From assembly GCA_002269645.1 (NCBI GenBank), contig NIVC01002824.1, positions 1-36,382 on the forward strand: a stretch of 36,382 nt of DNA. Reading direction: 5' to 3'. The DNA is from Macrostomum lignano. Taxonomy: Eukaryota. Under the pieces are notes generated by a model. The model searched no databases, was not told where the DNA came from, and worked only from the letters and a program-made list of their open reading frames with translations. Each line of letters opens with the position of its first letter. Position 1 is the first letter of the stretch. Of this stretch, positions 10,007-34,019 are shown one piece after another. The translations under genes and the position numbers were made by a program.

Positions 10007-10012
10007 TTTATT
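10007..10012 (-). terminator. Candidate polyadenylation signal AATAAA for ADCK1
   Basis: TTTATT on + strand, ~110 nt downstream of the ADCK1 stop. Confidence 0.55.
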
Positions 10013-10119
10013 TAATTCTATTTTAACAATCAAAACAGATTTCAAATTAGCTACTGGATAAAAGTATGCGCAATCAATACTACTCATCACAAGTAGTCAA
10101 AAGACAGTAAAAATGCAAC

Positions 10120-12946
10120 TCAAGCGCTTTCAACGGAAGCAGCCGCTGCGGCCCAGAGGTCCCGGACGATGAGCAGCGCACGGATCAGGCAGAGCCGGCA
10201 GCGCAGGCGGAGCCAGTCGCGCCAGTCGGCGGCTGCCCAGCTGGCCTCGGCCAGGGTGCGCAGGCAGGCGTCCGTCAGCAGGGTGAAAGACAGGCCGGGC
10301 CCGAACCTCTGCCGGCCCGTCAGGCGGTGCTCGATGCCTCTGAGCAGGTCGTTGGCTTTGAATAGCAGCAGCATCTGCCGGGGCACCGACTCCAGCACCT
10401 GCGTCATCTGCGGCAGGAGGCGACCGGCCTCCGACTGAATGGACTGGGTGGGATGGGGCGGCTCTCTAGGTGTGGGATGGGACGACTCTCAGGTGTGGGA
10501 TGGGGCGGCTCTTAGGTGTGGGATGGGACGACTCTCAGGTGTGGGATGGGGCGGCTCTTAGGTGTGGGATGGGGCGGCTCTCAGGTGTGGGATGGGGCGG
10601 CTCTCAGGTGTGGGATGGGACGACTCTCAGGTGTGGGATGGGACGACTCTCAGGTGTGGGATGGGACGACTCTCAGGTGTGGGATGGGGCGGCTCTCAGG
10701 TGTGGGATGGGGCGGCTCTTAGGTGTGGGATGGGGCGGCTCTCAGGTGTGGGATGGGGCGGCTCTCAGGTGTGGGATGGGGCGGCTCTCAGGTGTGAGAT
10801 AGAGGAGGCTGTCAGGTGTGGGATAGGGAGCGATGCTAAGGTGTGGGATGGGGCAGTTCTGAAATATGTTACAGGGAATATTTCAAGCTCAGCCCGCCTA
10901 CCAGCTCCTCCTCAGTGGAGAACTCGCTCCGGCTGACTCCGGCAGAGACGGCCCGCCAGGAGCGGCCGCTGACCATGCAGGCGAACAGGCCGTAGAGATG
11001 GCCGCAGCCCAGGCTGTCAGCGCTGGCCCGGATGCCGGCCAAGTCGCCGTCTATGATGGCGCGCCACAGCCGGCAGTAGCTGAGTCGGAAGTCCGGCGTC
11101 AGCTGGTTGTAGAGGCCGTGGTCTAACAGCACTATGCGGACTCCTGCGAATGGTTGAGTTAGAATGGTAGTGTAAGCATTGGTATCAGTAGTATCGTCAG
11201 TAGTATCGTCAGTAGTATCGTCAGTAGTATTATCAGTAGCATTATCAGTAGTATTAGCAGTAGTGTCATCTCAGTAGCATTATCAGTAGTATCATCAGTA
11301 GTATCATCAGTAGTATCATCAGTAGTATCATCAGTAGTATCATCAGTAGTATCATCAGTAGTATCATCAGTAGTATCATCAGTAGTATCATCAGTAGTAT
11401 CATCAGTAGTATCATCAGTAGTATCACCAGTAGTATCATCAGTAGTATCACCAGTAGTATTATCAGTAGTATTATCAGTAGTAATATCAGAAGTATCTTT
11501 AGTAGTATTATCAAAGTATTAGCAGTAGTATCATCAGCAGTAGTATCAGTAGCAGCAGCAGCCGAGCACTAACCGGAAGGCAGTGCAGGGTCGGGCCGCA
11601 CCAGGAGATTGCCGGGATGAGGGTCGCTGTGCACGAAGCCGCAGTCGAACATCATGCAGCTGTACAGCTGGTTCACCTGCTTCACAATCTGGCGCCTGTC
11701 CAGCCGGTTGGAGCTGATGTACGCCAGGTCGTCAATCTGGCCGCCCCGGCACAGCTCCATGACCAGCACCCGCTTGCTGACCAGGCCGGCCACCGCGCCC
11801 GGAACCTCCAGCCAGGGGAAGCGGCCGCAGTACAGCCGCCGGGCCAGTCGCATGTTCTCGGCCTCGGCGGCGAAGTCCAGCTCGCGCGGCAAATTCCGTC
11901 GGGTCTCGTCGACCAGCCATTGAAAGTGAAAGTCGACGAATAGGCGGGACACCAGGCCCACCAGCCAGTCCATGGTGGCCATGTCGGCCGCGGACCTGGC
12001 CAGCACGTCCGGGTGCTGCACCTTCACCGCCACCGGCGTGCCGTCCAGCAGCTCCGCCCGGTGCACCTGCGCCAGGCTGGCGGCGCCGCACGGTGACGGG
12101 TCGATGCTGCGGAATATGCTGTGCGCCTGGGGATCAGGGAATGGGGCTGAGGGGATCAGGGAATGGGCTGAGGGGATCAGGGAATGGGCTGAGGGGATCA
12201 GGGAATGGGCTGAGGGGATCAGGGAATGGGGCTGAGGGGATCAGGGAATGGGGCTGAGGGGATCAGGGATTGGGGCTGAGGGGATCAGGGAATGGGCTGA
12301 GGGATCAAGGAATGGGCTGAGGGGATCAGGGAATGGGCTGAGGGGATCAGGGATTGGGGCTGAGGGGATCAGGGAATGGGGCTGAGGGGATCAGGGAATG
12401 GGGCTGAGGGGATCAGACAATGGGGCTGAAGGGAACAGATAGATGGGATCCTGTGGGGATTGGTAAGTCAGAGTCACAGACGTGAAGTGGTGATAGAACA
12501 GAAGCAATAAACGCCCCCCCTCTCACCGGCCGGCCAAAGTCCTCCTCGATGACCTGGCGAACCTCTTCAATATTGGAGGCCGGCGCGTCGCTGTGCAGGC
12601 GGCCCAGCACCCGGGTGTAGGGCTCCGGCAGCAGGTAATTAAGTGCGGCCAGGTGCTGCCCGACTTTGACGAAGCAGCCGCGGTTGACGCAGCACAGCCG
12701 GTGCAGCCGGTTGGCCGAGCGCTCGTGCACCTCGGCGATGACGGCCGCGTATTCCGGACTGTCCGGGACTAGGCCGGACAGGCTCCATTTGTAGTCGGCG
12801 GCGACCCGGGCGACGATGAGGCCGGCCCGACCAAATCTGAGGACGCCTCGGACACCTTGGCCAGCAACGGGGTCCGAGTTTGAGTAGCTGGCCGCTGCCG
12901 CTGCCGCTGCCGCCGTGACCGCGACTGCCACTGCTCTGCGGTGATG
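10120..12946 (-). CDS. ADCK1: AarF domain-containing kinase 1 (UbiB/ABC1 family)
   Basis: Exons 12946(5' end uncertain)-12527, 12126-11574, 11143-10902, 10443-10120; all GT-AG and phase-consistent, ~515 aa. Motifs: CFVKVGQHLAALNYLLPE (KxGQ), GAASLAQVH, VAVKVQHP, LPRELDF, GFVHSDPHPGN, VLLDHGLY, VPRQMLLLFKANDLLRGIE. These closely match vertebrate ADCK1. Confidence 0.95.
10447..10860. repeat. 23-bp minisatellite CAGGTGTGGGATGGGGCGGCTCT, ~16 copies
   Basis: ADCK1 last intron. Confidence 0.95.
11185..11550. repeat. 12-bp repeat AGTAGTATCATC
   Basis: ADCK1 intron; explains the MILL-repeat ORF. Confidence 0.95.
12128..12430. repeat. 21-22-bp G-rich minisatellite GGGGATCAGGGAATGGG(G)CTGA, ~13 copies
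   Basis: ADCK1 intron. Confidence 0.95.
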
Positions 12947-13075
12947 CTGCAAGGTGCCGGGTTTCACCCACTCTGGCGGTTAACCAGCGGCTCGCACCTT
13001 AACGTTACCTGGTTGGGCCTTGTATGACCCTTCCCTGACCCTGGTGATCGCATCTGAGTAAGGCTTGACCCTGAC

Positions 13076-13235
13076 CTCACCTGACCCAAGCCCTACCTGA
13101 CCCAAGTCCAACCTGACCCAAGTCCCACCTGACCCAAGTCCCACCTGACCCAAGTCCCACCTGACCTAAGTCCCACCTGACTCAAGTCCCACCTGACCCA
13201 AGTCCCACCTGACCCAAGTCCCACGTGACTCAGGC
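13076..13235. repeat. 16-bp minisatellite CTGACCCAAGTCCCAC, ~9 copies
   Basis: Immediately upstream of ADCK1. Confidence 0.9.
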
Positions 13236-14119
13236 CTGACAAAACTCAGAAAAGACAAAAAACAAATAACTGGAATTTCTTCAATGATATGCTTGGGTAA
13301 ATATACTCGTAAAAAACTGAATATATTATAGATAGTTTACTCAAAAGATCCAGCTATGTCATAAGTCAAAAATTACTTAATTCGACTTAACAAAACCATT
13401 AAGATTAAGCTCTCAATTAATTTTAGACAATTAATTGACCAATTGCCAGCTTTAAAATGAGCCAAAAAAATCAAACATATGATTTATCACGAGATTAACA
13501 ATAAATTGCACAATTAATCTATATTAATGATCAATTACTTGTGGCACATAGCTTTAGCTAGATTACTTTCACTGGAAGAGTCTGCTTATTAAGATGTCTG
13601 TAGCAAAGCAGGAATATCGATAATAATAAAAAACTTACACAAAGCGACCGGGAATCAGAGGTTGAAATCATAGAAATGTCATAGTTCATGAAGCAAGCAA
13701 ATTTAGCTAAGTTGATTATTAATATTAAGACAGCTTATAAAATCAAGTTTAAAACAACTTCAAGAAACAAGTGACTTATATAACACAGTGAACATTTTGT
13801 GATTAACTGTTGCGTTAGTGGAGACGAGTGAAGCCTGGGATTAACACTGCCTTATAACACTTGATAAGTATGTTAAAATGAACAATTAAAATACTGGCAT
13901 ATTACTTCTGAGTAGCAATATTCGCGCATAGGTTTAAACAGTTGATAAAGTCACTTGAATTCTGCCCATCCAGCTGACTGCTGAGCACATACAAGTGCGC
14001 CAGTACTGTACGCAGGTACGCACTCTGTGCACCTGCAGTCTTCTGCTACTCATAGTAATAAAAAATCGGTACACGATTGACAATATTGGAATTAAAAAAG
14101 TACAGCTCAACAAACTCGG

Positions 14120-17100
14120 TCAGGCCAGAGGACTCTGCTGATCCAGCAGCTCTCGCTGCCTGTGCATCAGTTCTTGTTCTACTCGATAAACCCGCCTAGT
14201 TAGACGATTATTGCGCAATCGCAGGTAGCCAATTAGGGAGGCCTGCCTAGCCAGGAGCTCGTCCATGGGATGCGGCTGCTGCTGAGAATGCTGACGATTC
14301 AGAACTGTACTACTTGAAGAAGACGACAAGCCAACGTCAGCAACTGACAGCTTGCCACCAGTGGATGTGGTGAAGGAGCCGAATGGATCGTCAGGTTCTG
14401 TCTCGGCGGCATCAGCCAGCTGCTGATGACCCTCCGAGTAGGCGTCAGGCTGAGGCGATGCGGCCACCGACTGCCGCAGACGGCGCAGCAGCCACAGCAG
14501 CAGGCAGGAGTAGACCAGAGACTCGCAGGCCACCACCAGCATGACCAGATGCTGCGGGTAGAGCGGGCCCAGGCAGGCAGATCCGGTCGAGCTGTCGCCG
14601 CCGCCGATGGGGCAAAGCGACGCGGAGAAGCTGAGCATAGCGGAGAGGCCGGCTGTGACTGCGGGAATCTCAGCGGGGAGTGGGAATGGACCGCGTGTCA
14701 CTTGTCAAATTTTAACGCCCTCTGTAGATGAAATTGCGCCCCCTCAGATGACATGGCGCTTTTACTCAGATGAAATTGCGCCCCCTCAGATGACATGGCG
14801 CTTCCCTCAGATGACATGGCGCTTCCCTCAGATGAAATGGCGCTTCCCTCAGATGAAATGGCGCTTCCCTCAGATGACATGGCGCCCCCTCTCAGATGAC
14901 ATGGCGTCCTCTCAAATTAAATTGCGCCCCTCAGATGAAATTGCGCCCCCTCAGATGACATGGCGCTTCCCTCAGATGACATGGCGCTTCCCTCAGATGA
15001 AATGGCGCTTCCCTCAGATGACATGGCGCTTCCCTCAGATGACATGGCGCTTCCCTCAGATGAAATGGCGCTTCCCTCAGATGAAATGGCGCTTCCCTCA
15101 GATGACATGGCGCTTCCCTCAGATGACATGGCGCTTCCCTCAGATGAAATGGCGCTTCCCTCAGATGACATGGCGCCCCCTCTCAGATGACATGGCGTCC
15201 TCTCAAATTAAATTGCGCCCCTCAGATGAAATTGCGCCCCCTCAGATGACATGGCGCTTCCCTCAGATGACATGGCGCTTCCCTCAGATGACATGGCGCT
15301 TCCCTTAGATGACATGGCGCTTCCCTCAGATGAAATGGCGCTTCCCTCAGATGACATGGCGCCCCCTCTCAGATGACATGGCGTCCTCTCAAATTAAATT
15401 GCGCCCCTCAGATGAAACTGCGCCCCCTCAGGTAAATTGGCGACCCTAAATGAGTGGCACCCCCATAGATGACATAAAGCCCACTCAATTTGAAGCCTTT
15501 TATTCTTTAGCTTTTAAATTGGCCTCACTTGTGAACGCCGGTTGTGATCGAGCCCTTTAATATAAAAATAAATTATATTTTAAGGAGCTGACTGCTGAGC
15601 ACACACAAGCGCGCCAATGCTGTACGCAGGCACGCACTCACAAACACGCTCACCCAGGGTGTACAGCAGCCCTGACTTTCTGATCGTCAGGCATGTACAC
15701 TCTCAGGCATGTGCACTCTCAGGCATGTACACTCTCAGGCATGTACACTCTCAGGCATGTACACTCTCAGGCATGTACACTCTCAGGCATGTACACTCTC
15801 AGGCATGTACACTCTCAGGCATGTACACTCTCAGGCATGTGCACTCTCAGGCATGTACACTCTCAGGCATGTACACTCTCAGGCATGTACACTCAGGCAT
15901 GTGCACTCTCAGGCATGTACACTCTCAGGCATGTACACTCTCAGGCATGTACACTCTCAGGCATGTACACTCTCAGGCATGTACACTCTCAGGCATGTAC
16001 ACTCTCAGGCATGTGCACTCTCAGGCATGTACACTCTCAGGCATGTACACTCTCAGGCATGTACACTCAGGCATGTGCACTCTCAGGCATGTACACTCTC
16101 AGGCATGTACACTCTCAGGCATGTACACTCTCAGGCATGTTCACTCTCAGGCATGTACACTCTCAGGCATGTACACTCTCAGGCATGTACACTCTCAGGC
16201 ATGTTCACTCTCAGGCATGTACACTCTCAGGCATGTACACTCTCAGGCATGTACACTCTCAGGCATGTACACTCTCAGGCATGTACACTCTCAGGCATGT
16301 ACACTCTCAGGCATGTTCACTCTCAGGCATTTACACTCTCAGGCATGTACACTCTCAGGCATGTACACAATTTTCCTAGAATCAGAAGGCAGCCTTCAAA
16401 TACAGCTGAGGCTGGCACCAGCTACTCACAGCAGGCGCAGGTATAGAATGGCAGCCTGGCATAGCGCAGGCAGCAGCGGGCCACGCTGAGGTAGCCCGAG
16501 CGGGTCATTTGCCGACAGAACCAAAGCAGGCAGCCCTGGCAGGTCAGGGCCAAGCCGAACTGCAGACAGTTAATGCTAGCCGAATAAGCCAACTGCAGTT
16601 GCCAGGCGCACATTGGCTCCGAGCTGCCGGCAGTGGTGCTGTTGGGTGGCCGCTTGAACCAGGAAAATATTGCGGTGCAGCTGTACGGCAGCCAGAAGTG
16701 AACTGAGGACAGCACGAGCTGCGGGACAGGCGGAACAGGTTCACTTAGTATATAGTGGGGCGGTAGGCAGGCACGCGCTCTTACAGGGTGTACATGTACA
16801 TCTGCGCTCACTTTCCATCGTAGGGGAGTTTTCGCCACATTAAATAGATCGATTAGGAGGCCAAGGCATTCTAAAGTTTATCTTGTACGAAACCCCAGTG
16901 TTTGTTAAGTTCAGGTGACCATGCCGAGTTAACATTATCATATCATAATGATTCAGAATGCTTTGATCTCCCTATCGATCTACTTAATGTTAAACATCGT
17001 CATCATCATAATCATTATGATTAATCATCATCATAACCATTAAGCATCATCATCATCATCATCATCATCAGAATAACCATTATGATCTCACATCATCATC

Positions 17101-17797
17101 ATCATCAGAATAATCATTATGATCTCACATCATCATCATCAGAATAATCATCATGATCTCACATCATCATCATCATGATCTCACATCATCATCATCATGA
17201 TCATGAACATCATGATCATCAGAACAATCATCATGATCTCACATCATCATCATCAGAACAATCATTATGACGAATCAGCTCAATCTCTAAGAAACTGACA
17301 ATAAGATATCCGCAGTCACAGTACAAGACTTTGCATACACCATTCATCGAGTTTTTTATCTGAAAAAACTATAATTCCCTAAAGCTGTTTCACCTGAGCC
17401 CGGAGACTGCGACCTCCATGTTTACAGAATCCATATACCTAACAAACTGTTTGAAATCAATAGACTATAACACCACCAGTCGGCAGCTCACATAGCCCAG
17501 CAGTGTGGCAATGCAGAAGCAGACGCAAAACAAATCCGGCCGTCTGTGTCGAAAGCGCCGGAAGCAGCAGCTGCAGCACAGGCCGCTGCCCTCAGCGTCC
17601 TCTGCGTCGTTTAACTTATCGAATCTCTCGCTACTGGGACTAAACCGAATCCTAAAGGCGTGTTGCCGGCCTGACAGCAGCGGAACCGTCGGCGACGAAT
17701 ATTCGCCGTTATTGTCGGCGCCGTTAGAGTCGCTGTCGTAATTCGCTAGGTTGACGGGCAGTGTTGCCGGCTGTGGCTGCTGTTGGCTGATGGCCAA
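14120..17797 (-). CDS. TMEM192: Transmembrane protein 192-like (lysosomal membrane protein)
   Basis: Exons ~17800(start unresolved)-17492, 16718-16430, 14658-14120; GT-AG and phase-consistent. Similarity to human TMEM192: PLLSGRQHAFRIRF vs PLL...HFRPRF; RQMTRSGYLSV vs KIRNRGYNLI; LVVACESLVYSCLLLWLLRRL...SPQPD vs [20 protein letters not shown]...KPEPD; DELLARQASLIGYLRLRNNRLTRRV vs [25 protein letters not shown]. Confidence 0.8.
14725..15435. repeat. 21-bp minisatellite CCTCAGATGAMATGGCGCTTC with periodic variant blocks
   Basis: TMEM192 intron 2. Confidence 0.95.
15689..16368. repeat. 16-bp minisatellite TCTCAGGCATGTACAC, ~42 copies
   Basis: TMEM192 intron 2. Confidence 0.97.
16995..17270. 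repeat. Compound (CAT)n microsatellite with AGAATAATCATTATGATCTCAC interruptions
   Basis: TMEM192 intron 1. Confidence 0.9.
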
Positions 17798-17871
17798 CGA
17801 ACCGGAGGCAGCCGATCTTAGCGAAGACAGAAGTCGTTTTTGTTATGATTCTTTTTAGATTTACTCCGCTG

Positions 17872-17941
17872 GCTGAGTAGCTAACTGAGTAGCTAACTGA
17901 GTAGCTAACTGAGTAGCTAATTGAGTAGCTAACTGAGTAGA
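17872..17941. repeat. 12-bp repeat GAGTAGCTAACT, ~6 copies
   Basis: Same family as the arrays at 20845-21885. Confidence 0.9.
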
Positions 17942-18153
17942 TAACATAGTAGTGCTTAGGCATGCATGCATAGTACAAATACAATAATACTACTTCAATT
18001 AATAACAGTAGTCAGTTTGGGGGGTCTTTGGGCGCTGTCGCAAATTAAGACGACAGTCGACCCGCAGCCAGTGAAAAGGCAACAAGCCTTTCATGCCCAT
18101 TGCGCTGGCAGGGGTCACACAGGGTGCAAAGCGGCCCTGACTTTCTAACAGAC

Positions 18154-18219
<66 letters not shown>

Positions 18220-18220
18220 C

Positions 18221-18287
<67 letters not shown>

Positions 18288-18333
18288 ATAGTAGTAGTAG
18301 TAGCAGTAGTAGTAGTAATAGTAGTAGTAGTAA

Positions 18334-18372
<39 letters not shown>

Positions 18373-18373
18373 C

Positions 18374-18423
<50 letters not shown>

Positions 18424-18424
18424 C

Positions 18425-18462
<38 letters not shown>

Positions 18463-18493
18463 CAGTAGTAGTAGTAGTAGCAGTAGTAGTAGT
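18154..18493. repeat. (TAG)n microsatellite, ~113 units
   Basis: Near-perfect, with sparse CAG/TAA variants. Confidence 0.99.
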
Positions 18494-18613
18494 CTTTGAT
18501 GTAGCTCTGCCCTGCTACTAATACTATCTCAACTAGCAGCTAACAGCAAAGTAAAAGAAAGCAGACTAGGGGTACAGAAAAAACCCCAATACTGTTTTTT
18601 AGTAAAAACATAT

Positions 18614-18619
18614 TTTATT
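18614..18619 (-). terminator. Candidate polyadenylation signal AATAAA for EDC4
   Basis: First TTTATT (+ strand) below the EDC4 stop, ~490 nt downstream. Confidence 0.5.
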
Positions 18620-19103
18620 TACTTGGCCAAGCAAGCGTCGGAACAGAGGTTAAGTAACAAAGAAACAAGGGGACACAGGAATTTTTTAAAAAAGTAACAA
18701 GATCAACGAGACTGAGAGCTGCTGAATAAGAAAATAGCCACACAGGTATACGTATATATTAAAGCAACACCTTAGCACACGCACCGGTTGCTACAAGCTA
18801 TAGTACGGGGGGAGGAGGAGAGGGGAGGAGGGGAGGAGGAGAGGGGAGGAGGGGGAGAGAGAAGGAAAGGGAGGTAAGAGAGTAGAGAGGCGAGAGAAGA
18901 GACACACAGCAGCAGTACCAGCTGCGGTTAGCGGCATAAATATTAATTCTGAATAAACAACAGTAATAAAATAACGCCAACTTTTGAAACAACAAATTTG
19001 AACAGTAAAACTGCTAATAAAACACTTGCACTACAGAGTCGATAAACTTCATGTTAGAGTCGAATTGTGTTTAAGAAATGCGGAGAATCAAGCCGAGAGC
19101 GAT

Positions 19104-25100: not shown

Positions 25101-28057
25101 AGAGGCCAGCATGGGGGAGTGCTTGCCGATGCTAGCCAATCTACATTGAGGGTCCGGCATGGGGGAGTGCTTGCCGATGCTAGCCAATGTACATTGAGGG
25201 TCCGGCATGGGGGAGTGCTTGCCGATGCTAGCCAATGTACATTGAGGGTCCGGCATGGGGGAGTGCTTGCCGATGCTAGCCAATGTACATTGAGGGGCCA
25301 GCATGGGGGGAGTGCTTGCCGATGCTAGCCAATGTACATTGAGGGGCCAGCATGGGGGGAGTGCTTGCAGGTGCTAGTCAATGTACATTAAAACTAAGCT
25401 TGAAGTACACTCACTCCTTTTTAACGCCGCGCACATCGTCCAAGAATAGCACGCGATAGACCGGCCTGCCCTCGTGCGGCTTCCACGGATCGGGCATTTG
25501 ACTGCGAACGATAAGAGAAGTCAATAACAGTTTATAGCTGGCCTGGGGAAAAGAGCCAAGCATATCAAAGAGATTCATTTCTCTTACCTAGCCTGCAACA
25601 GTCCGTCTTCCCATTCAACTTGAAAGAAGTACACGATACCGTCTAGACCGCAGGAGGCGACCAAGCCGCCCTCCGGACTGATGGCCAGGTCCATGATTGG
25701 CTGCGGCAAAATTATTTTTAGTTACAAATGTAATTAACAAAGCATGAGAATCGCCCACCTGTGCACCATGAGGGGCATGGCTATGAAGTCATCGCACACC
25801 TGTGCACCATGAGAATCGCACACCTGTGCACCATGAGAATCGCACACCTGTGCACCATGAGAATCGCACACCTGTGCACCATGAGAATCGCACACCTGTG
25901 CACCATGAGAATCGCACACCTGTGCACCATGAGAATCGCACACCTGTGCACCATGAGAATCGCACACCTGTGCACCATGAGAATCGCACACCTGTGCACC
26001 ATGAGAATCGCACACCTGTGCACCATGAGAATCGCACACCTGTGCACCATGAGAATCGCACACCTGTGCACCATGAGAATCGGCAATATGTGCACCATGA
26101 GAATCGCACACCTGTGCACCATGAGAATCGCACACCTGTGCACCATGAGAATCGCACACCTGTGCACCATGAGAATCGCACACCTGTGCACCATGAGAAT
26201 CGCACACCTGTGCACCATGAGAATCGCACACCTGTGCACCATGAGAATCGCACACCTGTGCACCATGAGAATCGCACACCTGTGCACCATGAGAATCGCA
26301 CACCTGTGCACCATGAGAATCGCACACCTGTGCACCATGAGAATCGCACACCTGTGCACCATGAGAATCGCACACCTGTGCATCATGAGAATTGCCCACC
26401 TGTGCACCATGAGAATCGCACACCTGTGCACCATGAGAATCGCCTATCTGTGCACCATGAGAATCGCACACCTGTGCATCATGAGAATTGCCCACCTGTG
26501 CACCATGAGAATCGCACACCTGTGCACCATGAGAATCGCCTATCTGTGCACCATGAGAATCGCACACCTGTGCACCATGAGAATCGCACACCTGTGCATC
26601 ATGAGAATTGCCCACCTGTGCACCATGAGAATCGCACACCTGTGCACCATGAGAATCGCCTATCTGTGCACCATGAGAATCGCACACCTGTGCACCATGA
26701 GAATCGCCTATCTGTGCACCATGAGAATCGCACACCTGAGCACCATGAGAATCGCCTATCTGTGCACCATGAGAATCGCACACCTGAGCACCACCTCCCG
26801 TATACAAATACCTTAGAAACCCCTAAATTCCCAATTTCCTCACCTGGCTGTGATTCTGAAACTTGACAAAATGCTCATCCAGGCTGTCCGAGTCCACAAC
26901 CTGGCCAGCATAGGTGGACACCAGTTTCTGCACATCCAGCAGGTTCAGCTCGTTGTCGTGCGTCACAGCCAGCAGACGAGCCTTGGCGCTTCGCCGACTC
27001 TCAGCGGAGGCTCCGTTCTGTCCGCCGCCACTCAAATCATCGTCTTCGTCCTCCTCGTCCTCGTCGTCGGCGTCGTCGGCGTCAGCAATATAGGGACACC
27101 AGGTGAGTCGGTGGTACTCGACACTCGGCCGCCGCTGCGCGTGACCGTCACCAGACGGCGGGTAAGCAATGACTCGGCGCTGTGCGAGTCTTGAATGAGA
27201 TCGACGTGCACAGTGCCGTGACCGTCAACCGAAGCAAGGATTGGCAGGTCGTCGATGTGAGCGAATGCTATGTCTACAACACGGCTGGCGTAGCCCTGCA
27301 GTGAAGAATGATCGCTTATTGCCAGAGAGAATTTTAAATGCAGATTAATGAGCTGGTTTTGATTAGCAGGAAGAAAACTATGACAAAAGCGTAATTCAAA
27401 CGTTAAGTAGACGAAACTCAGTAACTGTGCAAGTGACTCAGTGACTATGCAAGTGACTCAGTGATTGTGCAAGTGACTCAGTGACTGTGCAAGTGACTCA
27501 GTGACTATGCAAGTGACTCAGTGATTGTGCAAGTGACTCAGTGATTGTGCAAGTGACTCAGTGACGGTGCAAGTGACTCAGTGACTGTGCAAGTGACTCA
27601 GTGATTGCGCAAGTGACTCAGTGACACCTGTGCAGGCAAGGGCCTTATTCAAGCAGTTTCAAGTCAACCCAATGTACTACACCTTAATTAGAGCCTTAGC
27701 CGCAGTCTTGCTATTAAACACGCGTACAACGCCTTCGTCGTGCGAGGATCGAACCGCTTTAAGCGTGTAGGCAACCAGCGGCAGGCAGTGATGCGAAGCC
27801 ACCAAATGGCCATTATAGAACTGCTGAGTCCAAGCGAATTTTATCGTTGGGACAACTCGAATTCGGGCGTCCGCCTGGCGCTGCTCGGCGCCAGAATTCG
27901 AGGCCTGACTAGCCGTGACGTGCACCCGGCCGGGGCGCAGGCTGAACGAGCTGGAGTCCGACTGGCCGGTGCACGCTCTGGCGGGAGGACGGTCGGGACT
28001 GTTATTCTGATTCACTATGACTTGGAAACGGTTTATGACCTTAAACTGGTAATTCAT
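19104..28057 (-). CDS. EDC4: Enhancer of mRNA-decapping protein 4 (Ge-1/Hedls), 9 exons, two apparent frameshifts
   Basis: Exons 28057-27683, 27295-26844, 25700-25588, 25501-25415, 24613-24226, 23182-21948, 21467-21204, 20740-20255, 19286-19104. WD40 motifs match human EDC4: KFAWTQQFYNGHLVA, VVDIAFAH, HRLTWCPYI, LAISPEGGLVAS, WKPHEGRPV, NRELKLWRMDNWACLQTLQF, EFVIADP. These are followed by a low-complexity/acidic linker, a coiled coil and a Ge-1 C-terminal domain (AFKEALSS..LELVLDLC, LEQQVILSLIQQL, KCDYLQES, VRRVRMLA). Confidence 0.93.
19322..20125. repeat. 22-bp minisatellite CAGTGACTCACTCAATGCMACA, ~36 copies
   Basis: EDC4 last intron. Confidence 0.97.
20845..21170. repeat. 8/12-bp GAGTAGCT(AGCT/GACT) repeat
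   Basis: EDC4 intron 7. Confidence 0.9.
21540..21885. repeat. 8/12-bp GAGTAGCT(AACT/AGCT) repeat
   Basis: EDC4 intron 6. Confidence 0.9.
23345..24080. repeat. Degenerate 12-bp-based array (TTGACCCACTGA / TTGACCCATTCG) with 24/36-bp higher periods
   Basis: EDC4 intron 5. Confidence 0.9.
24626..25390. repeat. 48-bp minisatellite GGCATGGGGGAGTGCTTGCCGATGCTAGCCAATGTACATTGAGGGTCC, ~16 copies
   Basis: EDC4 intron 4; a 240-bp block is duplicated (identical ORFs at 24735 and 24975). Confidence 0.97.
25742..26792. repeat. 24-bp minisatellite GCACCATGAGAATCGCACACCTGT, ~43 copies
   Basis: EDC4 intron 2; open in several frames, explaining the 350-aa repetitive ORFs. Confidence 0.98.
27417..27623. repeat. 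20-bp minisatellite GTGACTCAGTGAYTRTGCAA, ~10 copies
   Basis: EDC4 intron 1. Confidence 0.95.
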
Positions 28058-28062
28058 AAATT

Positions 28063-28525
28063 GTCACTGACTCAAACAGTCAATGACCCAAACAGTCACT
28101 GACTCAAACAGTCAATGACCCAAACAGTCAATAACACAAACAGTCAATGACCCAAACAGTCAATAACACAAACAGTCAATGACCCAAACAGTCACTGACC
28201 CAAACAGTCACTGACCCAAACAGTCACTGACCCAAACAGTCAATGACCCAAACAATCAATGACCCAAACAGTCAATAACCCAAACAATCAATGACCCAAA
28301 CAGTCACTGACCCAAACATTCAATAACCCAAACAATCAATGACCTAAACAGTCACTGACCCAAACAGTCAATGACCCAAACAGTCAATAACCTAAACAGT
28401 CACTGACCCAAACAGTCACTGACCCAAACAGTCACTGACCCAAACGGTCACTGACCCAAACAGTCACTGACCCAAACAGTCCAGTCACTGACCCAAACGG
28501 TCACTGACCCAAACAGTCACTGACC
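28063..28525. repeat. 16-bp minisatellite CAGTCAMTGACCCAAA, ~28 copies
   Basis: Directly upstream of the EDC4 ATG. Confidence 0.95.
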
Positions 28526-28835
28526 GAAAAGTTATTAACAGAAAAGCAATGCAACAAGAGTGAAATAACAAGTACAATTTCAATTTTAACTTACATTTCT
28601 TGCAGGGATGCCATTGACAATACAACTGAAGATAAATATAGCTTGTTGATTTATATATCATGAATGCACAAGAAGTTTGTTTTTATAAAATTAGTCTTCA
28701 AAAGTACGAGCTGTGTATTGCTTTACTAGTGCTTGAATTTAATATCAAACTCAGACTAAAATCAAATGTAATAAAATGTTCTAAAAACTAAAAAATTCTA
28801 TTTCTATCTTCTCGGAATTGGACTGTTAGAAAACT

Positions 28836-29662
28836 TAAACCACACTGAAAATCAGCCCTAAACCACACTGAGAATCAACCCTAAACCACACTGAAAATCA
28901 ACCCTAAACCACACTGAAAATCAACCCTAAACCACACTGAAAATCAACCCTAAACCACACTGAAAATCAACCCTAAACCACACTGAAAATCAACCCTAAA
29001 CCACACTGAAAATCAACCCTAAACCACACTGAAAATCAGCCCTAAACCACACTGAGAATCAACCCTAAACCATAGAGAATCAGCCCTAAACCATAGAGAA
29101 TCAGCCCTAAACCATAGAGAATCAGCCCTAAACCATAGAGAATCAGCCCTAAACCATAGAGAATCAACCCTAAACCACACTGAGAATCAGCCCTAAACCA
29201 TAGAGAATCAGCCCTAAACCATAGAGAATCAGCCCTAAACCATAGAGAATCAGCCCTAAACCATAGAGAATCAGCCCTAAACCATAGAGAATCAACCCTA
29301 AACCACACTGAGAATCAGCCCTAAACCATAGAGAATCAGCCCTAAACCATAGAGAATCAGCCCTAAACCATAGAGAATCAACCCTAAACCACACTGAGAA
29401 TCAGCCCTAAACCATAGAGAATCAGCCCTAAACCATAGAGAATCAGCCCTAAACCATAGAGAATCAACCCTAAACCACACAGAATCAACCCTAAACCACT
29501 GAGAATCAGCCCTAAACCACACTGAGAATCAACCCTAAACCACACTGAGAATCAGCCCTAAACCATAGAGAATCAGCCCTAAACCATAGAGAATCAGCCC
29601 TAAACCATAGAGAATCAGCCCTAAACCACACAGAATCAGCCCTAAATCATAGAGAATCAGCC
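28836..29662. repeat. 21-23-bp minisatellite CARCCCTAAACCAYA(C/G)(T)GAGAAT, ~38 copies
   Basis: YTHDC1-EDC4 intergenic region; each unit contains CCCTAA. Confidence 0.95.
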
Positions 29663-29760
29663 TAATGATTCTGATTTCTCTAATAAATCTACCTGAGAGC
29701 AGTATACATAGAAATAAAAAGAAAATAATCAAAGACTTTCAAGAACATTACAGATATCAA

Positions 29761-29766
29761 TTTATT
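29761..29766 (-). terminator. Candidate polyadenylation signal AATAAA for YTHDC1
   Basis: First canonical TTTATT (+ strand) I found below the YTHDC1 stop (~1 kb); a variant ATTAAA occurs near 29930. Confidence 0.4.
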
Positions 29767-30159
29767 AGTGTTAGTAACACGACCATAAAACATAAATAAA
29801 GACATATACACACACACACAACAAGAGTTCAGAGAGTAAAAGCAGTTATGTTAGGCATTAGACAAATACAAAACATGGCATGGCTTATTGCTACTAATTA
29901 ATGGCCTTTCTAAGTATTTTCATCGCCTTTAATTGAGAGAACATATTACCTTCAAAAAGCAGAAATGAATTTAAAATCATGCTGACAGTAGAAATAACTT
30001 AAACAGTAGGCCACCATTTTTTGTTACGTCTAAACGTCTAAATGGAGTGTCGGAGGCTCCGCGTTATTCTGCATTACTGAGGAAAAACGCTCGTAGGGCC
30101 AAAGCTGTCTTACGCTGCTTCCATTCTGCGTAGCTAAAGTTGTAAAAGGAGTTTTTTAC

Positions 30160-30464
30160 TATACTTTACTTTACTATTATACTATTACTACTACCATACT
30201 ACTAATGTTACTACTACTATAATATACACTACTATCTTTACTACTGTATTATTACTACTACTATACTACTATTACTACTACTATTACTACTAATATTACT
30301 ACTATTACTACTATTATTAATACTACTACTACTAATACTACTACTATTACAAATACTACTACTATTACTACTACTACTATTACTACTACTACTACTACTG
30401 CTACTACTACTGCTACTACTACTGCTACTACTAATACTACTACTATTACAAATACTACTACTAT

Positions 30465-30504
<40 letters not shown>

Positions 30505-30590
30505 GCTACAACTACTGCTACTACTACTACTACTACTACTATTACTACTACTATTACTACTACTACTACTACTATATTACCAATTTCTAT
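30160..30590. repeat. Degenerate (TAC)n/(TAT)n microsatellite
   Basis: Direct inspection; explains the poly-Val ORF at 30261-30632. Confidence 0.95.
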
Positions 30591-30803
30591 TAATATACTA
30601 GTCAAAGTAACGCTTTTCGAGTCCCGAGGCATTTAGACATTAATGAAACAAGCAACACATACAATTAGGTCAACATTACAAGCTTTACGAGCGTACTGAT
30701 GCTAGGCAGCTTAATTTCATACTACAGTAAAATTAGTTAAAAAAATAAACCAATGCTTCAACAAAAACAGGTGTCCAATAGTAAAGAAGAGAACCGGAGC
30801 GTC

Positions 30804-33800
30804 TCAGCGTCGAGAAGACGATCGAGAACGTCGTCGTCGACGACGTCGACTGCGGCTTGACGAAGAGCGGCCGCCGTCATCGTCCGATGAGCTCGGACTG
30901 TCGCCGCCGCTACTAGATAAAGCAGCCGCGGTGGCGGTGGCTGCGGAAGCCGCGGCGGCACCTGGAGCGGCCCCGGTAGTGCGCTGGAGAAACTCGTTGA
31001 CGCGCTTCTCGTAATCCTCGGCAGAGAGTTGAGGCTGCTGCACCTGCTGCTGCACCTGGAACTGCTGCTGCTGCTGGTAGGCGTACATAGGCTGCTGCTG
31101 GCCGGGCATCATGTACTGAGCCTGGCCGTACATCATCGCGGCATAGGGATTGGCAGCGGCTGGGTACTGCTGGTAGCCATAAGCCGCATATTGCATCTGC
31201 TGCTGCGATGGCGGCTGCTGCTGAGATGCCTGATCAGCCGGGTTGGACACGGCTGAGCCGAACTGTCTCAGGTAGTCCTGATAGCTGCCATTGATGAACG
31301 TCTCTTTGCCGACGCCTTGAATGTCGCCGTTGCCGCCTTTCGGCGGACTTCGCGATCGGCGAGGCCGGCTCCTTGATCGTCGAGACCGGCTTCTTGACCG
31401 ACGACCGCCGCCTTCGCTAGATCGGCGACGTCGCCTAGACGAAGACGAACCAGAGTCGCGATGGCTTCGATGACGCTGCTGATGTCGGCGACGCTCACCA
31501 GGCGGCGATCGGCGACGATCTGTAGAGGGCGGCGACGACGCTCTCGGCGGCCGGTCCATCGACTGCGAGGGTGGCAGCGGCGGCGGAGGCAGCGAAGCCG
31601 GCTGTTGAAGATACGGCAGCTGCTGCTGATTGGGCGGCATCAGCGGCTGCCCGTGCGGCGCCATCATCGGGGGCGGGTAATGCTGATGATGCTGCTGCTG
31701 CTGCTGGTGATGCTGGTGATGATGAGGCAAGTTGACCCTGCGCCTGGACTTGGTGCGGTCAACCAGGCGATCCAGATCGCAATCGGGATCGAGATGGAAC
31801 AGGCGGCACAGGGCTTGGCCAACGCCCGGCTCAATCTCCTGGCCATCGCGACCGATTTTCACCGGTTTAAATTCGTTCCAAGCGTTCAATAGGTGGCCAG
31901 TTTTATTGAAGCGCAGCTCCCTACGGCTGAGCCAGTCGATGCGAAAGGTGCCGCTGAGAGCGCGATGGCTGAGGCCGGGCGGCAGGACCCAGTTCACCCG
32001 GTTGCTGGATTTCTCCGATGGGCCGGCCAGCCTGGCGTAGCCCTGGGTTCGAATTGCGTGTCAAGGATTTAGGGAGGGGGGGTTTGCGAATTAAAGTCTG
32101 CTTTAAAATATCAGTTTTCTTCTATCAGTGCTGTCGTTTCTTGCAAAGAAGCATCTTACTTTTGCTTGGAAATCACTTGACAACTTCATTCTTTATTGAC
32201 AACCCATTAGCTCATACTTACCTGTGAATAGTATCACTCGTAAGCTACTAATCAAAGTAGTAAGTTAAGCCCTAATAAATACACATTCAATGTTTAGAGC
32301 GTTGAATAATCTTTTCTGCTTTTTGTTGAGAGTAAATCAAATGGATAATATGCCGAAGTCAGAATGTTAAGTTTAGTGGGATAAGGGAAACTGGGGGATG
32401 GGATTAGGGATATGGATAATATGGGATAAGGGACACTGGGGAATGGGATTAGGGAATAGGAATATAGGTAATATGTGATATGGGACACTGGGAACGGGAT
32501 TAGGGAATAGGAATATAGGTAATATGTGATATGGGACACTGGGGAACGGGATTAGGGAATAGGAATATAGGTAATATGGGATAAAGGACACAGGGGAATG
32601 GGATTCGGGATATAGGTAATATGGGATAAGGGACACTGGGGAATGGGATTCGGATATAGGTAATATGGGATAAGGGACACTGGAGAATGGGATTAGGGAT
32701 ATAGGTAATATGGGATAAGGGACACTGGGGAATGGGATTAGGGATATAGGTAATATGGGATAAGGGACACTGGGGAATGGGATTGGGGATCTGGATAACA
32801 TGGGATAAGGGACACTGGGGAATTGGGATGGGATTGGGGATCTGGATAACATGGGATAAGGGACACTGGGAATGGATGGGATTGGGGATCTGGATAATAT
32901 GGGATAAGGGACACTGGGGAATGGATGGGATTGGGGATCTGGATAACATGGGATAGGGGACACTGGGGAATGGATGGGATTGGGGATCTGGATAATATGG
33001 ATAAGGGACACTGGGGAGTGGGTGGGATTGGGGATTTGGATAATATGGGATAAGGGACATTGGGGAGTGGGTGGGATTGGGGATTTGGATAATATGGGAT
33101 AAGGGACTATATCTCTTTTGATTCACCTGAAGAGGACACTAATAGACTACATATGCATAAACCAACCCTATTGATCTGCCCCACAGAGAAACACTTTGCG
33201 GGAGAAACAGTTCAAGTCGCACAACAGGATGTATAATTAGTTATAATAATTAAATCAGTGCAGAAAGACTCAAATATAAAAATATATATCAGCATAGTCA
33301 ATCTAATGAGTCTCTTTAAGCAATCTCTATGTTTGGTATAAAATTAAAAAATCAGATCAAGTTTAGTGTAGACAAGAAAACACAGGTGAAATGCTTGCCA
33401 ATAAAACTTTATAAATAAATAAATTTGTGTGCCAATTTAAGACTAGGTAGGTCATAGCACACACACCTGTCACCTAAATAGAGTCTCCAAAATGCACAGT
33501 CCCCCGAGATAAAAGTTCAATTCAGCAATCAATTTATCAATAACAGTTCCAGCAGGGCGCGGTGCCGATGTGCGTTAATTAAATAACTACCTGGAATCGG
33601 CCGCTCTCCTTCACTGAGAATATCAGATAGACGGAGCGCGACTCGTGATAAGCGCCATTCAATCTGTGCTCATTTGGCGGCGGCGTGGCCCAGACGCCTT
33701 TAGCTTTGGCCAGAGACACGTTCTCATAATTGGAGCTTTTAATCATAAAGTAGCGAGCGTCGCGAAACAGATGATCGAGTTGCTCCGGTTGCTCCGGCGG

Positions 33801-34019
33801 CGGCGAGCCCGCTGCCGCTGCTGAGTCCCCGACGAATACCGGCTGCTGCTGCTGCTCCGAGGCCGCCGCCACCGTCTCCGCCGCCACATTCTCATTGTTG
33901 ACATCGGCCGATTGCATCCTGATTGGCGAGATCGCAGGCTTTGAGAACTGCTCGGCAGCTGTTGATTCATCAGCTGGCTGCTCCTGCTGCTGCTGTTGCT
34001 CAACTTCGGTTGCACTCAT
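30804..34019 (-). CDS. YTHDC1: YTH domain-containing protein 1 (YT521-B), nuclear m6A reader, 2 exons, ~555 aa
   Basis: Exons 34019-33591 and 32042-30804 (phase 0; CAG|GTAGTT, CCCAG|GGC). YTH domain: [37 protein letters not shown]|[47 protein letters not shown]1-type C-terminal motifs: [26 protein letters not shown], and an RS-rich tail. Confidence 0.95.
32375..33105. repeat. ~43-47-bp G-rich minisatellite GGGATAAGGGACACTGGGGAATGGGATTRGGGATMTRGRTAATAT, ~16 copies
   Basis: YTHDC1 intron. Confidence 0.93.

What the first reader, a model, noticed from the sequence alone, without database searches (positions are those of the whole stretch)
10120..34019. Candidate four-gene eukaryotic operon: YTHDC1-EDC4-TMEM192-ADCK1
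Four unrelated conserved housekeeping genes are co-oriented on the - strand. CDS gaps are ~2.7, 1.3 and 1.1 kb and are mostly filled with repeats. Only YTHDC1 has a long (>2 kb) unique upstream region, and the two distal genes have acceptor-like AG sites but no clear ATG. SL trans-splicing and operons are established in flatworms and nematodes, where operons are enriched for RNA-metabolism and mitochondrial genes. An m6A reader next to the decapping scaffold would place two mRNA-fate factors under one promoter.
Basis: inference. Interest (0 to 1): 0.75.

Follow-up and report, generated by a model that had tools for sequence, protein, structure and literature searches.

The report
Flatworm spliced-leader gene cluster, partly operon
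This is a public contig of the flatworm Macrostomum lignano carrying four same-strand housekeeping genes; the last two (TMEM192, ADCK1) have no start codon of their own and almost certainly receive it from the trans-spliced leader and share one transcription unit, which is an ordinary, already described way of organising genes in this animal, while a single four-gene operon remains unproven.

Summary
The window is GenBank contig NIVC01002824.1 of Macrostomum lignano (Mlig_3_7). It carries YTHDC1, EDC4, TMEM192 and ADCK1 on the minus strand. A convergent gene follows ADCK1. In sister contigs, at least 10 kb of AT-rich, gene-free DNA lies upstream of YTHDC1.

M. lignano is already known to trans-splice about 30% of its genes to one 35-nt leader ending in ATG, and about 15% of its genes are assigned to operons with repeat-inflated spacers.

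TMEM192 and ADCK1 fit that pattern:
- Exon 1 of TMEM192 has no ATG in any frame, and the first in-frame Met of ADCK1 is residue 189.
- The deposited CDSs are 5'-partial and start in phase 0.
- The ADCK1 CDS starts directly after a TTGCAG acceptor.
- Both genes carry the same transcriptional-unit prefix, Mlig000296.

EDC4 differs. Its trans-splicing status is unknown.

YTHDC1 carries a different transcriptional-unit prefix.

All three spacers fall under or at the published limit of 1 kb repeat-adjusted distance, counting the 3'UTRs. Only the first spacer is mostly repeats.

Verdict: TMEM192–ADCK1 is probably a dicistron, a four-gene operon is possible (about 0.3), and this is a known kind of organisation of low novelty.

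The parts
33591..34019 (-). YTHDC1 exon 1 (own ATG at 34019; N-terminal half of the YTH domain)
   Evidence: Pfam YTH E=4.5e-18. With exon 2 it reproduces deposited protein P0016 exactly.
30804..32042 (-). YTHDC1 exon 2 (C-terminal half of the YTH domain, RS- and Q-rich tail, stop TGA 30806-30804)
   Evidence: Pfam YTH; exact match to the 555-aa P0016.
28615..30803 (-). Spacer 1, YTHDC1 stop to EDC4 ATG: 2,189 bp, 56% tandem repeats ((TAC)n 30172-30574; 21-mer array 28836-29662). Canonical poly(A) hexamers at 29933, 29766 and 28743.
28626..28657 (-). EDC4 5' flank: TATATAAA (28657-28650) followed by CTTCAG (28631-28626), 11 nt before the ATG. CTTCAG fits the published trans-acceptor motif YTNCAG and also reads as an initiator (TCAGTT). 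The TATA-like part is not conserved in sister contig NIVC01003030.1.
   Evidence: motif from PMC8629364
28595..28614 (-). EDC4 exon 1: 20 nt, ATGGCATCCCTGCAAGAAAT (MASLQE), donor GTAAGT.
   Evidence: The annotated CDS start of the 1,128-aa EDC4 in sister contig lies at this sequence. It splices in frame to exon 2.
19104..27998 (-). EDC4 exons 2-10: 27998-27683, 27295-26844, 25700-25588, 25501-25415, 24613-24209, 23172-21948, 21467-21204, 20740-20255, 19286-19104 (stop TAG 19106-19104)
   Evidence: Pfam Ge1_WD40 and EDC4_C. GT-AG model is open for 1,183 aa once one missing base is restored. The GenBank CDS on this contig is only 916 aa, 25694-19104.
27111..27130 (-). 1-bp deletion in EDC4 exon 3 (GAGTGT-CGAG here, GAGTGTCCGAG in NIVC01003030.1). 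It shifts the frame and gives a stop at codon 200.
17828..19103 (-). Spacer 2, EDC4 stop to TMEM192 5' end: 1,276 bp, 36% tandem repeats. Single AATAAA at 18619, 484 nt after the stop.
14120..17827 (-). TMEM192: exons 17827-17492, 16718-16430, 14658-14120. The CDS is 5'-partial (starts SSLRS) with no ATG in exon 1 in any frame. The annotated 5' end follows CTTCTG, not an AG.
   Evidence: Exact match to P0007 / PAA55000.1, 'BOX15_Mlig000296g6, partial'. Pfam TMEM192.
12947..14119 (-). Spacer 3, TMEM192 stop to ADCK1 5' end: 1,173 bp, 14% tandem repeats, no canonical AATAAA or ATTAAA.
12931..12952 (-). ADCK1 acceptor cluster: TTGCAG (12952-12947; in frame with an SL-donated ATG; fits YTNCAG), followed by CCGCAG and GAGCAG (both out of frame).
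   Evidence: Deposited 5'-partial CDSs start directly after these AGs: P0014 HHRRAV after TTGCAG, P0011 AVAVAVT, P0004 AVAVT.
10120..12946 (-). ADCK1: exons 12946-12527, 12126-11574, 11143-10902, 10443-10120. The first in-frame Met is residue 189.
   Evidence: Exact match to P0014 (512 aa, 'BOX15_Mlig000296g5, partial'). Pfam ABC1 E=4.7e-46.
10007..10016 (-). ATTAAATAAA poly(A) signal 103-107 nt after the ADCK1 stop; likely 3' end of the cluster.

Best explanation
The window is a complete contig of the Macrostomum lignano genome. It holds an ordinary spliced-leader (SL) gene cluster of that species.

Shown or directly read from the sequence:
- Four co-oriented genes, YTHDC1, EDC4, TMEM192 and ADCK1, sit behind a gene-free, AT-rich region.
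- A convergent gene follows ADCK1.
- TMEM192 and ADCK1 have coding first exons without a usable ATG.

Inferred from deposited annotation and published methods:
- Both mRNAs begin at trans-splice sites, and the 35-nt SL, which ends in ATG, supplies their initiator codon in frame.
- The two genes are cut out of one RNA-seq-assembled transcriptional unit (cluster Mlig000296). In other words they form an SL-resolved dicistron.

Inferred, and weaker:
- EDC4 and YTHDC1 may lie on the same primary transcript, because all three spacers fall under or at the published M. lignano operon rule of <1 kb after repeat subtraction.
- However, EDC4 has its own ATG and a possible core promoter, and YTHDC1 is a separate unit in the public transcriptome.

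I therefore commit to 'at least TMEM192–ADCK1 is an operon; extension upstream is open'.
For: Identity of the window: contig NIVC01002824.1, 36,382 bp, the same length as the window. NIVC01 is the Mlig_3_7 assembly (PMC5730564).

Published background (PMC8629364):
- The SL is CGGTCTCTTACTGCGAAGACTCAATTTATTGCATG.
- About 30% of genes are trans-spliced and about 15% lie in operons.
- Repeats inflate spacers. The repeat-adjusted mode is about 100 bp and the cut-off is 1 kb.
- The trans-acceptor motif is [T/C]TNCAG.

ADCK1:
- The exon model equals P0014 exactly.
- In the sister contig the P0014 CDS starts at the first base after ACCTTGCAG.
- There is no in-frame Met before residue 189.

TMEM192:
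- The exon model equals P0007, which is deposited as 'partial'.
- Exon 1 has 0 ATG against 4.1 expected.
- The CDS start is in phase 0.

Transcriptional unit:
- Both genes carry the prefix Mlig000296: g2 and g6 are TMEM192; g1, g5 and g7 are ADCK1.
- The prefix denotes a cluster of RNA-seq transcriptional units. These are 'cut' into genes at SL and poly(A) signals by TBONE.
- Chimeric TMEM192+ADCK1 models of 815 and 817 aa exist in an independent annotation. Such chimeras are treated as operon indicators in PMC12582326.

Arrangement and spacers:
- The arrangement is identical in three other contigs, and no annotated gene interrupts it.
- Repeat-adjusted spacers, counting the 3'UTRs, are 949-960, 812 and 1,009 bp.
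- Only the terminal gene has a canonical poly(A) signal close to its stop, at 103 nt.
Against: - No SL-containing read, cap signal or spacer-spanning read was seen directly. All RNA-level evidence is second-hand, through CDS boundaries and gene names.
- The TMEM192 annotated 5' end follows CTG, not AG. So either a non-canonical TG acceptor is used or that boundary has another origin.
- Two of three deposited ADCK1 5' ends lie after out-of-frame AGs.
- Raw spacers of 1.2-2.2 kb are far from the roughly 100-bp mode.
- Spacer 3 is only 14% tandem repeat, leaving about 1 kb of unique DNA that could hold a promoter.
- About 60% of trans-spliced M. lignano genes are not in operons (PMC8629364).
- The YTHDC1 prefix differs (Mlig023363).
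- The EDC4 gene name could not be recovered.
Confidence: 0.6

Rival explanations
1. Full four-gene operon. One promoter upstream of 34019 makes a pre-mRNA of about 24 kb. The three downstream mRNAs are released by 3' processing and SL trans-splicing.
For: - The arrangement is co-oriented and uninterrupted in four contigs.
- At least 10 kb upstream of YTHDC1 is gene-free.
- All spacers fall under or at the published repeat-adjusted 1 kb rule (PMC8629364).
- CTTCAG lies 11 nt before the EDC4 ATG and fits the trans-acceptor motif.
- Internal genes lack a proximal canonical poly(A) signal, whereas ADCK1 has one.
- The authors state that transcriptional units tend to split in repeat-rich operon spacers. 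A separate YTHDC1 unit is therefore not strong counter-evidence.
- Weak inference: if cluster numbers follow cd-hit length order, Mlig000296 would be among the roughly 300 longest units. That is longer than the 7.7 kb TMEM192–ADCK1 span.
Against: - YTHDC1 has a different unit prefix.
- EDC4 has its own ATG, with which an SL ATG at 28625 would be out of frame.
- A TATA-like box plus TCAGTT lies at the right spacing for an independent EDC4 start site.
- Spacer 1 is 2.2 kb.
- There is no direct RNA evidence.
- None of these gene names appears in the text or held supplements of the parasitic-flatworm SL/operon study.
Confidence: 0.3
2. Four independent transcription units that merely share a strand. 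TMEM192 and ADCK1 are trans-spliced from their own short outrons. The shared unit name reflects read-through or assembly bridging.
For: - Most trans-spliced M. lignano genes are not operonic (PMC8629364).
- Each spacer holds 0.8-1 kb of non-tandem DNA. According to PMC5730564, regions of up to 2 kb upstream of start sites were sufficient for tissue-specific expression of the genes tested.
- The spacers are no shorter than the genes' own introns, which measure 0.09-1.8 kb.
- Co-orientation of four genes has a chance probability of 1 in 8.
Against: - TMEM192 and ADCK1 share a transcriptional-unit cluster.
- Chimeric models exist in an independent annotation.
- Spacer 3 has no canonical poly(A) hexamer.
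- No promoter-like feature was found in spacers 2 and 3.
Confidence: 0.2

Closest known systems
Macrostomum lignano SL trans-spliced operons (Wudarski et al. 2017, PMC5730564; Ustyantsev & Berezikov 2021, PMC8629364)
   Same: - Same organism and assembly.
- Same-strand neighbours of conserved genes.
- Spacers inflated by tandem repeats.
- Downstream genes start at a YTNCAG-type acceptor.
- Genes are cut from one RNA-seq transcriptional unit.
   Different: - Repeat-adjusted spacers here are 0.8-1.0 kb including 3'UTRs. That is near the cut-off rather than near the roughly 100-bp mode.
- Only one of the three junctions has RNA-level support that I could reach.
Flatworm SL 3'-terminal AUG used as initiator methionine (Cheng et al. 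2006, as cited in PMC12582326)
   Same: - The SL ends in ATG.
- TMEM192 and ADCK1 have open first exons without an ATG.
- Their annotated 5' ends are in phase 0, so the SL ATG would start the protein.
   Different: - Translation from the SL AUG has not been shown for these genes or, to my knowledge, for this species.
- The TMEM192 junction lacks a canonical AG.
Caenorhabditis elegans SL2-type operons
   Same: Polycistronic pre-mRNA resolved by 3' processing plus SL trans-splicing; enrichment for conserved housekeeping genes.
   Different: - C. elegans uses a dedicated SL2 and spacers of about 100 nt.
- M. lignano has a single SL (PMC8629364).
- The spacers here are 1.2-2.2 kb.
- The nematode SL does not donate the start codon (own knowledge).

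Membership tests
M. lignano operon (operational definition of PMC8629364) | Immediately adjacent genes on the same strand, not interrupted by an opposite-strand gene | tested here: met
   Annotated genes on this contig and three sister contigs run YTHDC1, EDC4, TMEM192, ADCK1 with nothing between. No convincing plus-strand ORF lies in the spacers.
M. lignano operon (operational definition of PMC8629364) | Downstream gene is SL trans-spliced: ADCK1 | tested here: met
   Indirect. The deposited 5'-partial CDS starts at the first base after TTGCAG, there is no ATG before residue 189, and gene boundaries come from SL reads according to PMC5730564. No SL read was seen directly.
M. lignano operon (operational definition of PMC8629364) | Downstream gene is SL trans-spliced: TMEM192 | tested here: inconclusive
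   The CDS is 5'-partial and in phase 0, and exon 1 has no ATG in any frame. However, the boundary follows CTTCTG, not AG, in all three copies examined.
M. lignano operon (operational definition of PMC8629364) | Downstream gene is SL trans-spliced: EDC4 | not testable with these tools
   The CDS starts at its own ATG, so the mRNA 5' end is not visible from CDS coordinates. CTTCAG lies 11 nt upstream and is only a motif match.
M. lignano operon (operational definition of PMC8629364) | Repeat-adjusted intergenic distance below 1 kb | tested here: met
   From stop codon to next 5' end, minus TRF repeats: 949-960, 812 and 1,009 bp. These are upper bounds because they include the 3'UTRs. Poly(A) sites are unknown, and interspersed repeats other than tandem ones could not be masked.
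Operon in the strict sense (one promoter, one primary transcript) | A polycistronic precursor RNA spans the genes | tested here: inconclusive
   TMEM192 and ADCK1 share the transcriptional-unit prefix Mlig000296, and YTHDC1 has Mlig023363. The EDC4 name was not recovered. No reads were inspected.
Operon in the strict sense (one promoter, one primary transcript) | Absence of independent promoters in the spacers | not testable with these tools
   This needs CAGE/RAMPAGE, chromatin or reporter data. The only sequence hint is TATATAAA plus TCAGTT before EDC4, and it is not conserved in a sister contig.
C. elegans-type operon | About 100-nt intercistronic region and a specialised downstream SL | tested here: not met
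   Raw spacers are 1.2-2.2 kb. A single SL is described for M. lignano (PMC8629364).
SL-AUG-initiated flatworm mRNAs | Acceptor in frame with the ORF and no upstream ATG of the gene's own | tested here: met
   For ADCK1, TTGCAG|CAT CAC is in phase 0. For TMEM192, |TCT TCG is in phase 0. Neither has a usable ATG. Chance of both being in phase is 1 in 9.

The most novel reading that the evidence does not exclude
All four genes, including the nuclear m6A reader and the decapping scaffold, are transcribed from one promoter as a four-cistron unit of about 24 kb with kilobase-long, repeat-filled spacers. In addition, TMEM192 receives its SL, and with it its start codon, at a non-canonical TG 3' splice site.
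Probability: 0.2. Interest if true: 0.4.

Novelty: new member of a known kind. Interest (0 to 1): 0.25.

Why it matters
If the cluster is an operon, it is one more of the several thousand predicted in M. lignano. It would be a handy test case for three reasons:
- It combines a junction with good support (TMEM192–ADCK1) with two uncertain, repeat-rich junctions.
- It shows two genes that depend on the spliced leader for their start codon.
- The species can be made transgenic, so promoter activity in the spacers can be tested directly.

It does not open a new question. Co-regulation of an m6A reader with a decapping factor would be a mild curiosity, and it rests on the weakest junction.

Practical value: gene finders truncate or fuse such genes. 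ADCK1 is deposited here as 324 aa starting at an internal Met, and 815-817-aa TMEM192–ADCK1 chimeras sit in UniProt.

Tried and rejected
RNA features:
- An Rfam and tRNA scan of the window found nothing. There is no SL RNA gene here.

Protein searches:
- Homology searches gave only M. lignano entries and distant hits, so they held no other flatworm and gave no synteny test. Two of the searches timed out.
- I looked up exact SL-initiated full-length proteins (M+P0014, M+P0007, M+P0009, and versions read through the SL) in the 15-billion-protein collection, hoping for RNA-seq contigs carrying the SL. None was present.
- I tried to rebuild the deposited 916-aa EDC4 protein to learn its Mlig name. 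Brute-force and guided GT-AG enumeration gave 909-, 916- and 918-aa models, and none is in the collection.

Literature:
- Supplements of PMC5730564, PMC5816591, PMC8629364 and PMC12582326 hold none of the gene names or Mlig identifiers. A full-text search for the identifiers also found nothing.

Comparison of assembly copies:
- Copies are 96-99% identical, introns and spacers included. There is too little divergence to reveal conserved spacer elements.
- Self-BLAST of the spacers found only satellite-type similarity and one 54-bp dispersed match.

Readings I rejected:
- EDC4 starting at the ATG at 28057. It lies in the intron; the real start is the 20-nt exon at 28614.
- GTGAGC at 24225 as the EDC4 donor. 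It encodes the conserved VSRC motif.
- My first guesses for in-frame TMEM192 acceptors (CAACAG, CAGCAG, CCACAG at about 17785-17770). The deposited 5' end lies upstream of them.
- The UniProt TMEM192–ADCK1 fusions as proof of co-transcription. They use an exon inside the 16-mer repeat and may be predictor artefacts.
Full report
**What the window is.** The exon-1 ORF of the YTH gene is found word for word on a Macrostomum lignano contig. A look-up of the TMEM192 protein returned record NIVC01002824.1, whose length of 36,382 bp equals the window. NIVC01 is the Mlig_3_7 assembly of the flatworm M. lignano (PMC5730564). Near-identical copies of the locus lie on NIVC01002605.1, NIVC01000946.1, NIVC01003030.1 and a 256,948-bp contig. 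They are 96-99% identical, introns and spacers included. This fits the known redundancy of this assembly (PMC8629364).

**Gene content.** Pfam confirms YTH, Ge1_WD40/EDC4_C, TMEM192 and ABC1 on minus-strand exons. I built exon models and checked them against deposited proteins.
- YTHDC1: 34019-33591 and 32042-30804. This equals the 555-aa P0016 exactly.
- TMEM192: 17827-17492, 16718-16430 and 14658-14120. This equals the 387-aa P0007 exactly.
- ADCK1: 12946-12527, 12126-11574, 11143-10902 and 10443-10120. This equals the 512-aa P0014 exactly.
- EDC4: ten exons from 28614 to 19104. Its first exon is only 20 nt (ATGGCATCCCTGCAAGAAAT, MASLQE). This is the annotated CDS start in NIVC01003030.1.

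Surroundings:
- Downstream of ADCK1 lies a convergent gene of 557 aa in the sister contig.
- Upstream of YTHDC1, sister contigs show 10 kb with no annotated gene. In L002 this stretch is 24-43% GC and holds no convincing ORF.
- Tandem repeats cover 43% of the window and fill most introns.

**Checking the observation.** Spacers from stop codon to the next 5' end are 2,178-2,189, 1,276 and 1,173 bp. TRF repeats make up 56%, 36% and 14% of them. So 'mostly repeats' holds only for the first spacer.

The 'no ATG' remark is correct and is the most telling feature:
- TMEM192 exon 1 (336 nt, 58% GC, open for 112 codons, includes the first transmembrane segment) has no ATG in any frame, against 4.1 expected.
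- ADCK1 exon 1 has one out-of-frame ATG against 3.5 expected.
- The first in-frame Met of ADCK1 is residue 189, inside the kinase-like domain.

**What is known for this species.**
- M. lignano adds one 35-nt spliced leader, CGGTCTCTTACTGCGAAGACTCAATTTATTGCATG, to about 30% of its genes.
- About 15% of genes are assigned to operons.
- Spacers are inflated by repeats. After repeat subtraction the mode is about 100 bp.
- The authors call an operon when the downstream gene is trans-spliced and the adjusted distance is under 1 kb.
- The acceptor motif is [T/C]TNCAG (PMC8629364).
- The GenBank annotation derives from RNA-seq 'transcriptional units'. These often are polycistronic precursors, and the TBONE pipeline cuts them into genes at SL-read and poly(A)-read signals. 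Units clustered at 95% identity share a name prefix (PMC5730564).
- All flatworm SLs end in ATG, which can serve as a start codon (Cheng et al. 2006, as cited in PMC12582326).

**Evidence for TMEM192 and ADCK1.**
- The deposited ADCK1 protein P0014 ('BOX15_Mlig000296g5, partial') begins HHRRAV. In its contig the CDS starts at the first base after ACCTTGCAG. The window has the identical sequence at 12952-12946.
- TTGCAG fits the published motif. The junction is in phase 0, so SL...ATG|CAT CAC gives M-HHRRAV.
- Two other deposited ADCK1 models start after the next two AGs (CCGCAG and GAGCAG), which are out of frame. These look like tandem alternative acceptors.
- TMEM192 proteins from two independent annotations all begin SSLRS, at TCT 17827, again in phase 0.
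- The base pair before that start is TG (CTTCTG|TCT) in all three copies examined. This is unexplained. It could be a non-canonical TG acceptor in an otherwise YTNC-G context, or a boundary of other origin.
- Both genes carry the prefix Mlig000296: g2 and g6 are TMEM192; g1, g5 and g7 are ADCK1. By the authors' naming rule, at least one assembled RNA unit covers both.
- UniProt also holds 815- and 817-aa TMEM192+ADCK1 chimeras. These are weaker evidence, because they use an exon inside a repeat.
- Spacer 3 has no AATAAA or ATTAAA, whereas ADCK1 has ATTAAATAAA 103 nt after its stop.

**EDC4 and YTHDC1.**
- YTHDC1 carries a different prefix, Mlig023363.
- I could not recover the EDC4 name.
- EDC4 has its own ATG. 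Eleven nucleotides upstream lies CTTCAG, preceded by a pyrimidine-rich stretch. That fits the acceptor motif, but an SL ATG joined there would be out of frame with the EDC4 ATG.
- The same bases read as TCAGTT with TATATAAA about 25-30 nt upstream, which would be a classical core promoter.
- The TATA-like part is not conserved in NIVC01003030.1.
- Repeat-adjusted spacers including 3'UTRs are 949-960, 812 and 1,009 bp. All three junctions would therefore pass the published rule if the downstream genes are flagged as trans-spliced. They sit near the cut-off, not near the mode.
- The authors note that transcriptional units tend to break in repeat-rich operon spacers. Separate names therefore do not exclude co-transcription.

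**Conclusion.** TMEM192–ADCK1 is probably an SL-resolved dicistron. I put co-transcription at about 0.7 and SL dependence of both start codons at about 0.8. A three- or four-gene operon is possible, with all four at about 0.3. The kind of system is already described for this species, and the genes and units are already in GenBank. This is therefore a new member of a known kind, of modest interest. The proposed link between m6A reading and decapping rests on the least supported junction.

**Limits.**
- No RNA reads, cap data or chromatin data were accessible.
- No other flatworm genome could be searched, so synteny is untested.
- The text and held supplements of the parasitic-flatworm SL/operon study mention none of these genes.

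Noticed in passing
27111-27130 (- strand, EDC4 exon 3): This contig and NIVC01002605.1 lack one C (GAGTGT-CGAG) that NIVC01003030.1 has. The EDC4 frame breaks, giving a stop at codon 200. This explains why GenBank annotates only 916 aa here and 388 aa on the other contig. It could be an assembly indel or a real null allele.
   Followed up: partly
17827-17832 (- strand); same in L003:5457-5463 and L006:9995-10001: The deposited 5' end of TMEM192 follows CTTCTG, not an AG, in every copy examined and in two independent annotations. It could be a TG 3' splice site for SL addition.
   Followed up: partly
12931-12952 (- strand): Three AG acceptors lie within 16 nt at the ADCK1 5' end: TTGCAG, CCGCAG and GAGCAG. 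Each is used as a start in some deposited model. Only the first puts the SL ATG in frame, so the others would give non-productive mRNAs.
   Followed up: partly
whole window: Tandem-repeat arrays with periods of 12-62 bp cover 43% of the contig. They sit in most introns and in all spacers. The introns (86-1,771 bp) are as long and as repeat-rich as the intergenic gaps.
   Followed up: yes
about 1840-8730 (+ strand): A convergent gene, 557 aa in sister contig NIVC01000946.1, with no Pfam hit. It contains a single-pass membrane segment (ORF 7974-8537) and long repeat-filled introns. Its 3' end lies about 1.4 kb from the ADCK1 stop.
   Followed up: no
10120-11982 (- strand): GenBank annotates ADCK1 on this contig as 324 aa starting from the internal Met (MATMDW...). 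This loses 188 N-terminal residues, although the window encodes the full 512-aa form. It is a typical mis-annotation of an SL-AUG gene.
   Followed up: yes
24209-24226 (- strand, EDC4 exon 6 end): A consensus-looking GTGAGC is coding: it gives the V-S of the VSRC motif, which I recall as conserved in human EDC4. The donor that keeps the frame is the weak GTATTC 17 nt downstream.
   Followed up: partly
13972-14025 and 15586-15639: A 54-bp dispersed repeat (91% identity) is shared by the TMEM192 3' flank and TMEM192 intron 2. In sister contig L003 the 3'-flank copy is replaced by a different short insert. This may be a small mobile element.
   Followed up: no
34020-36382 and L002:1-10000: The region upstream of YTHDC1 is 24-43% GC in L002, with short AT-rich repeats (for example 36052-36157), and no gene for at least 10 kb. 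This contrasts sharply with exons of 55-65% GC.
   Followed up: partly
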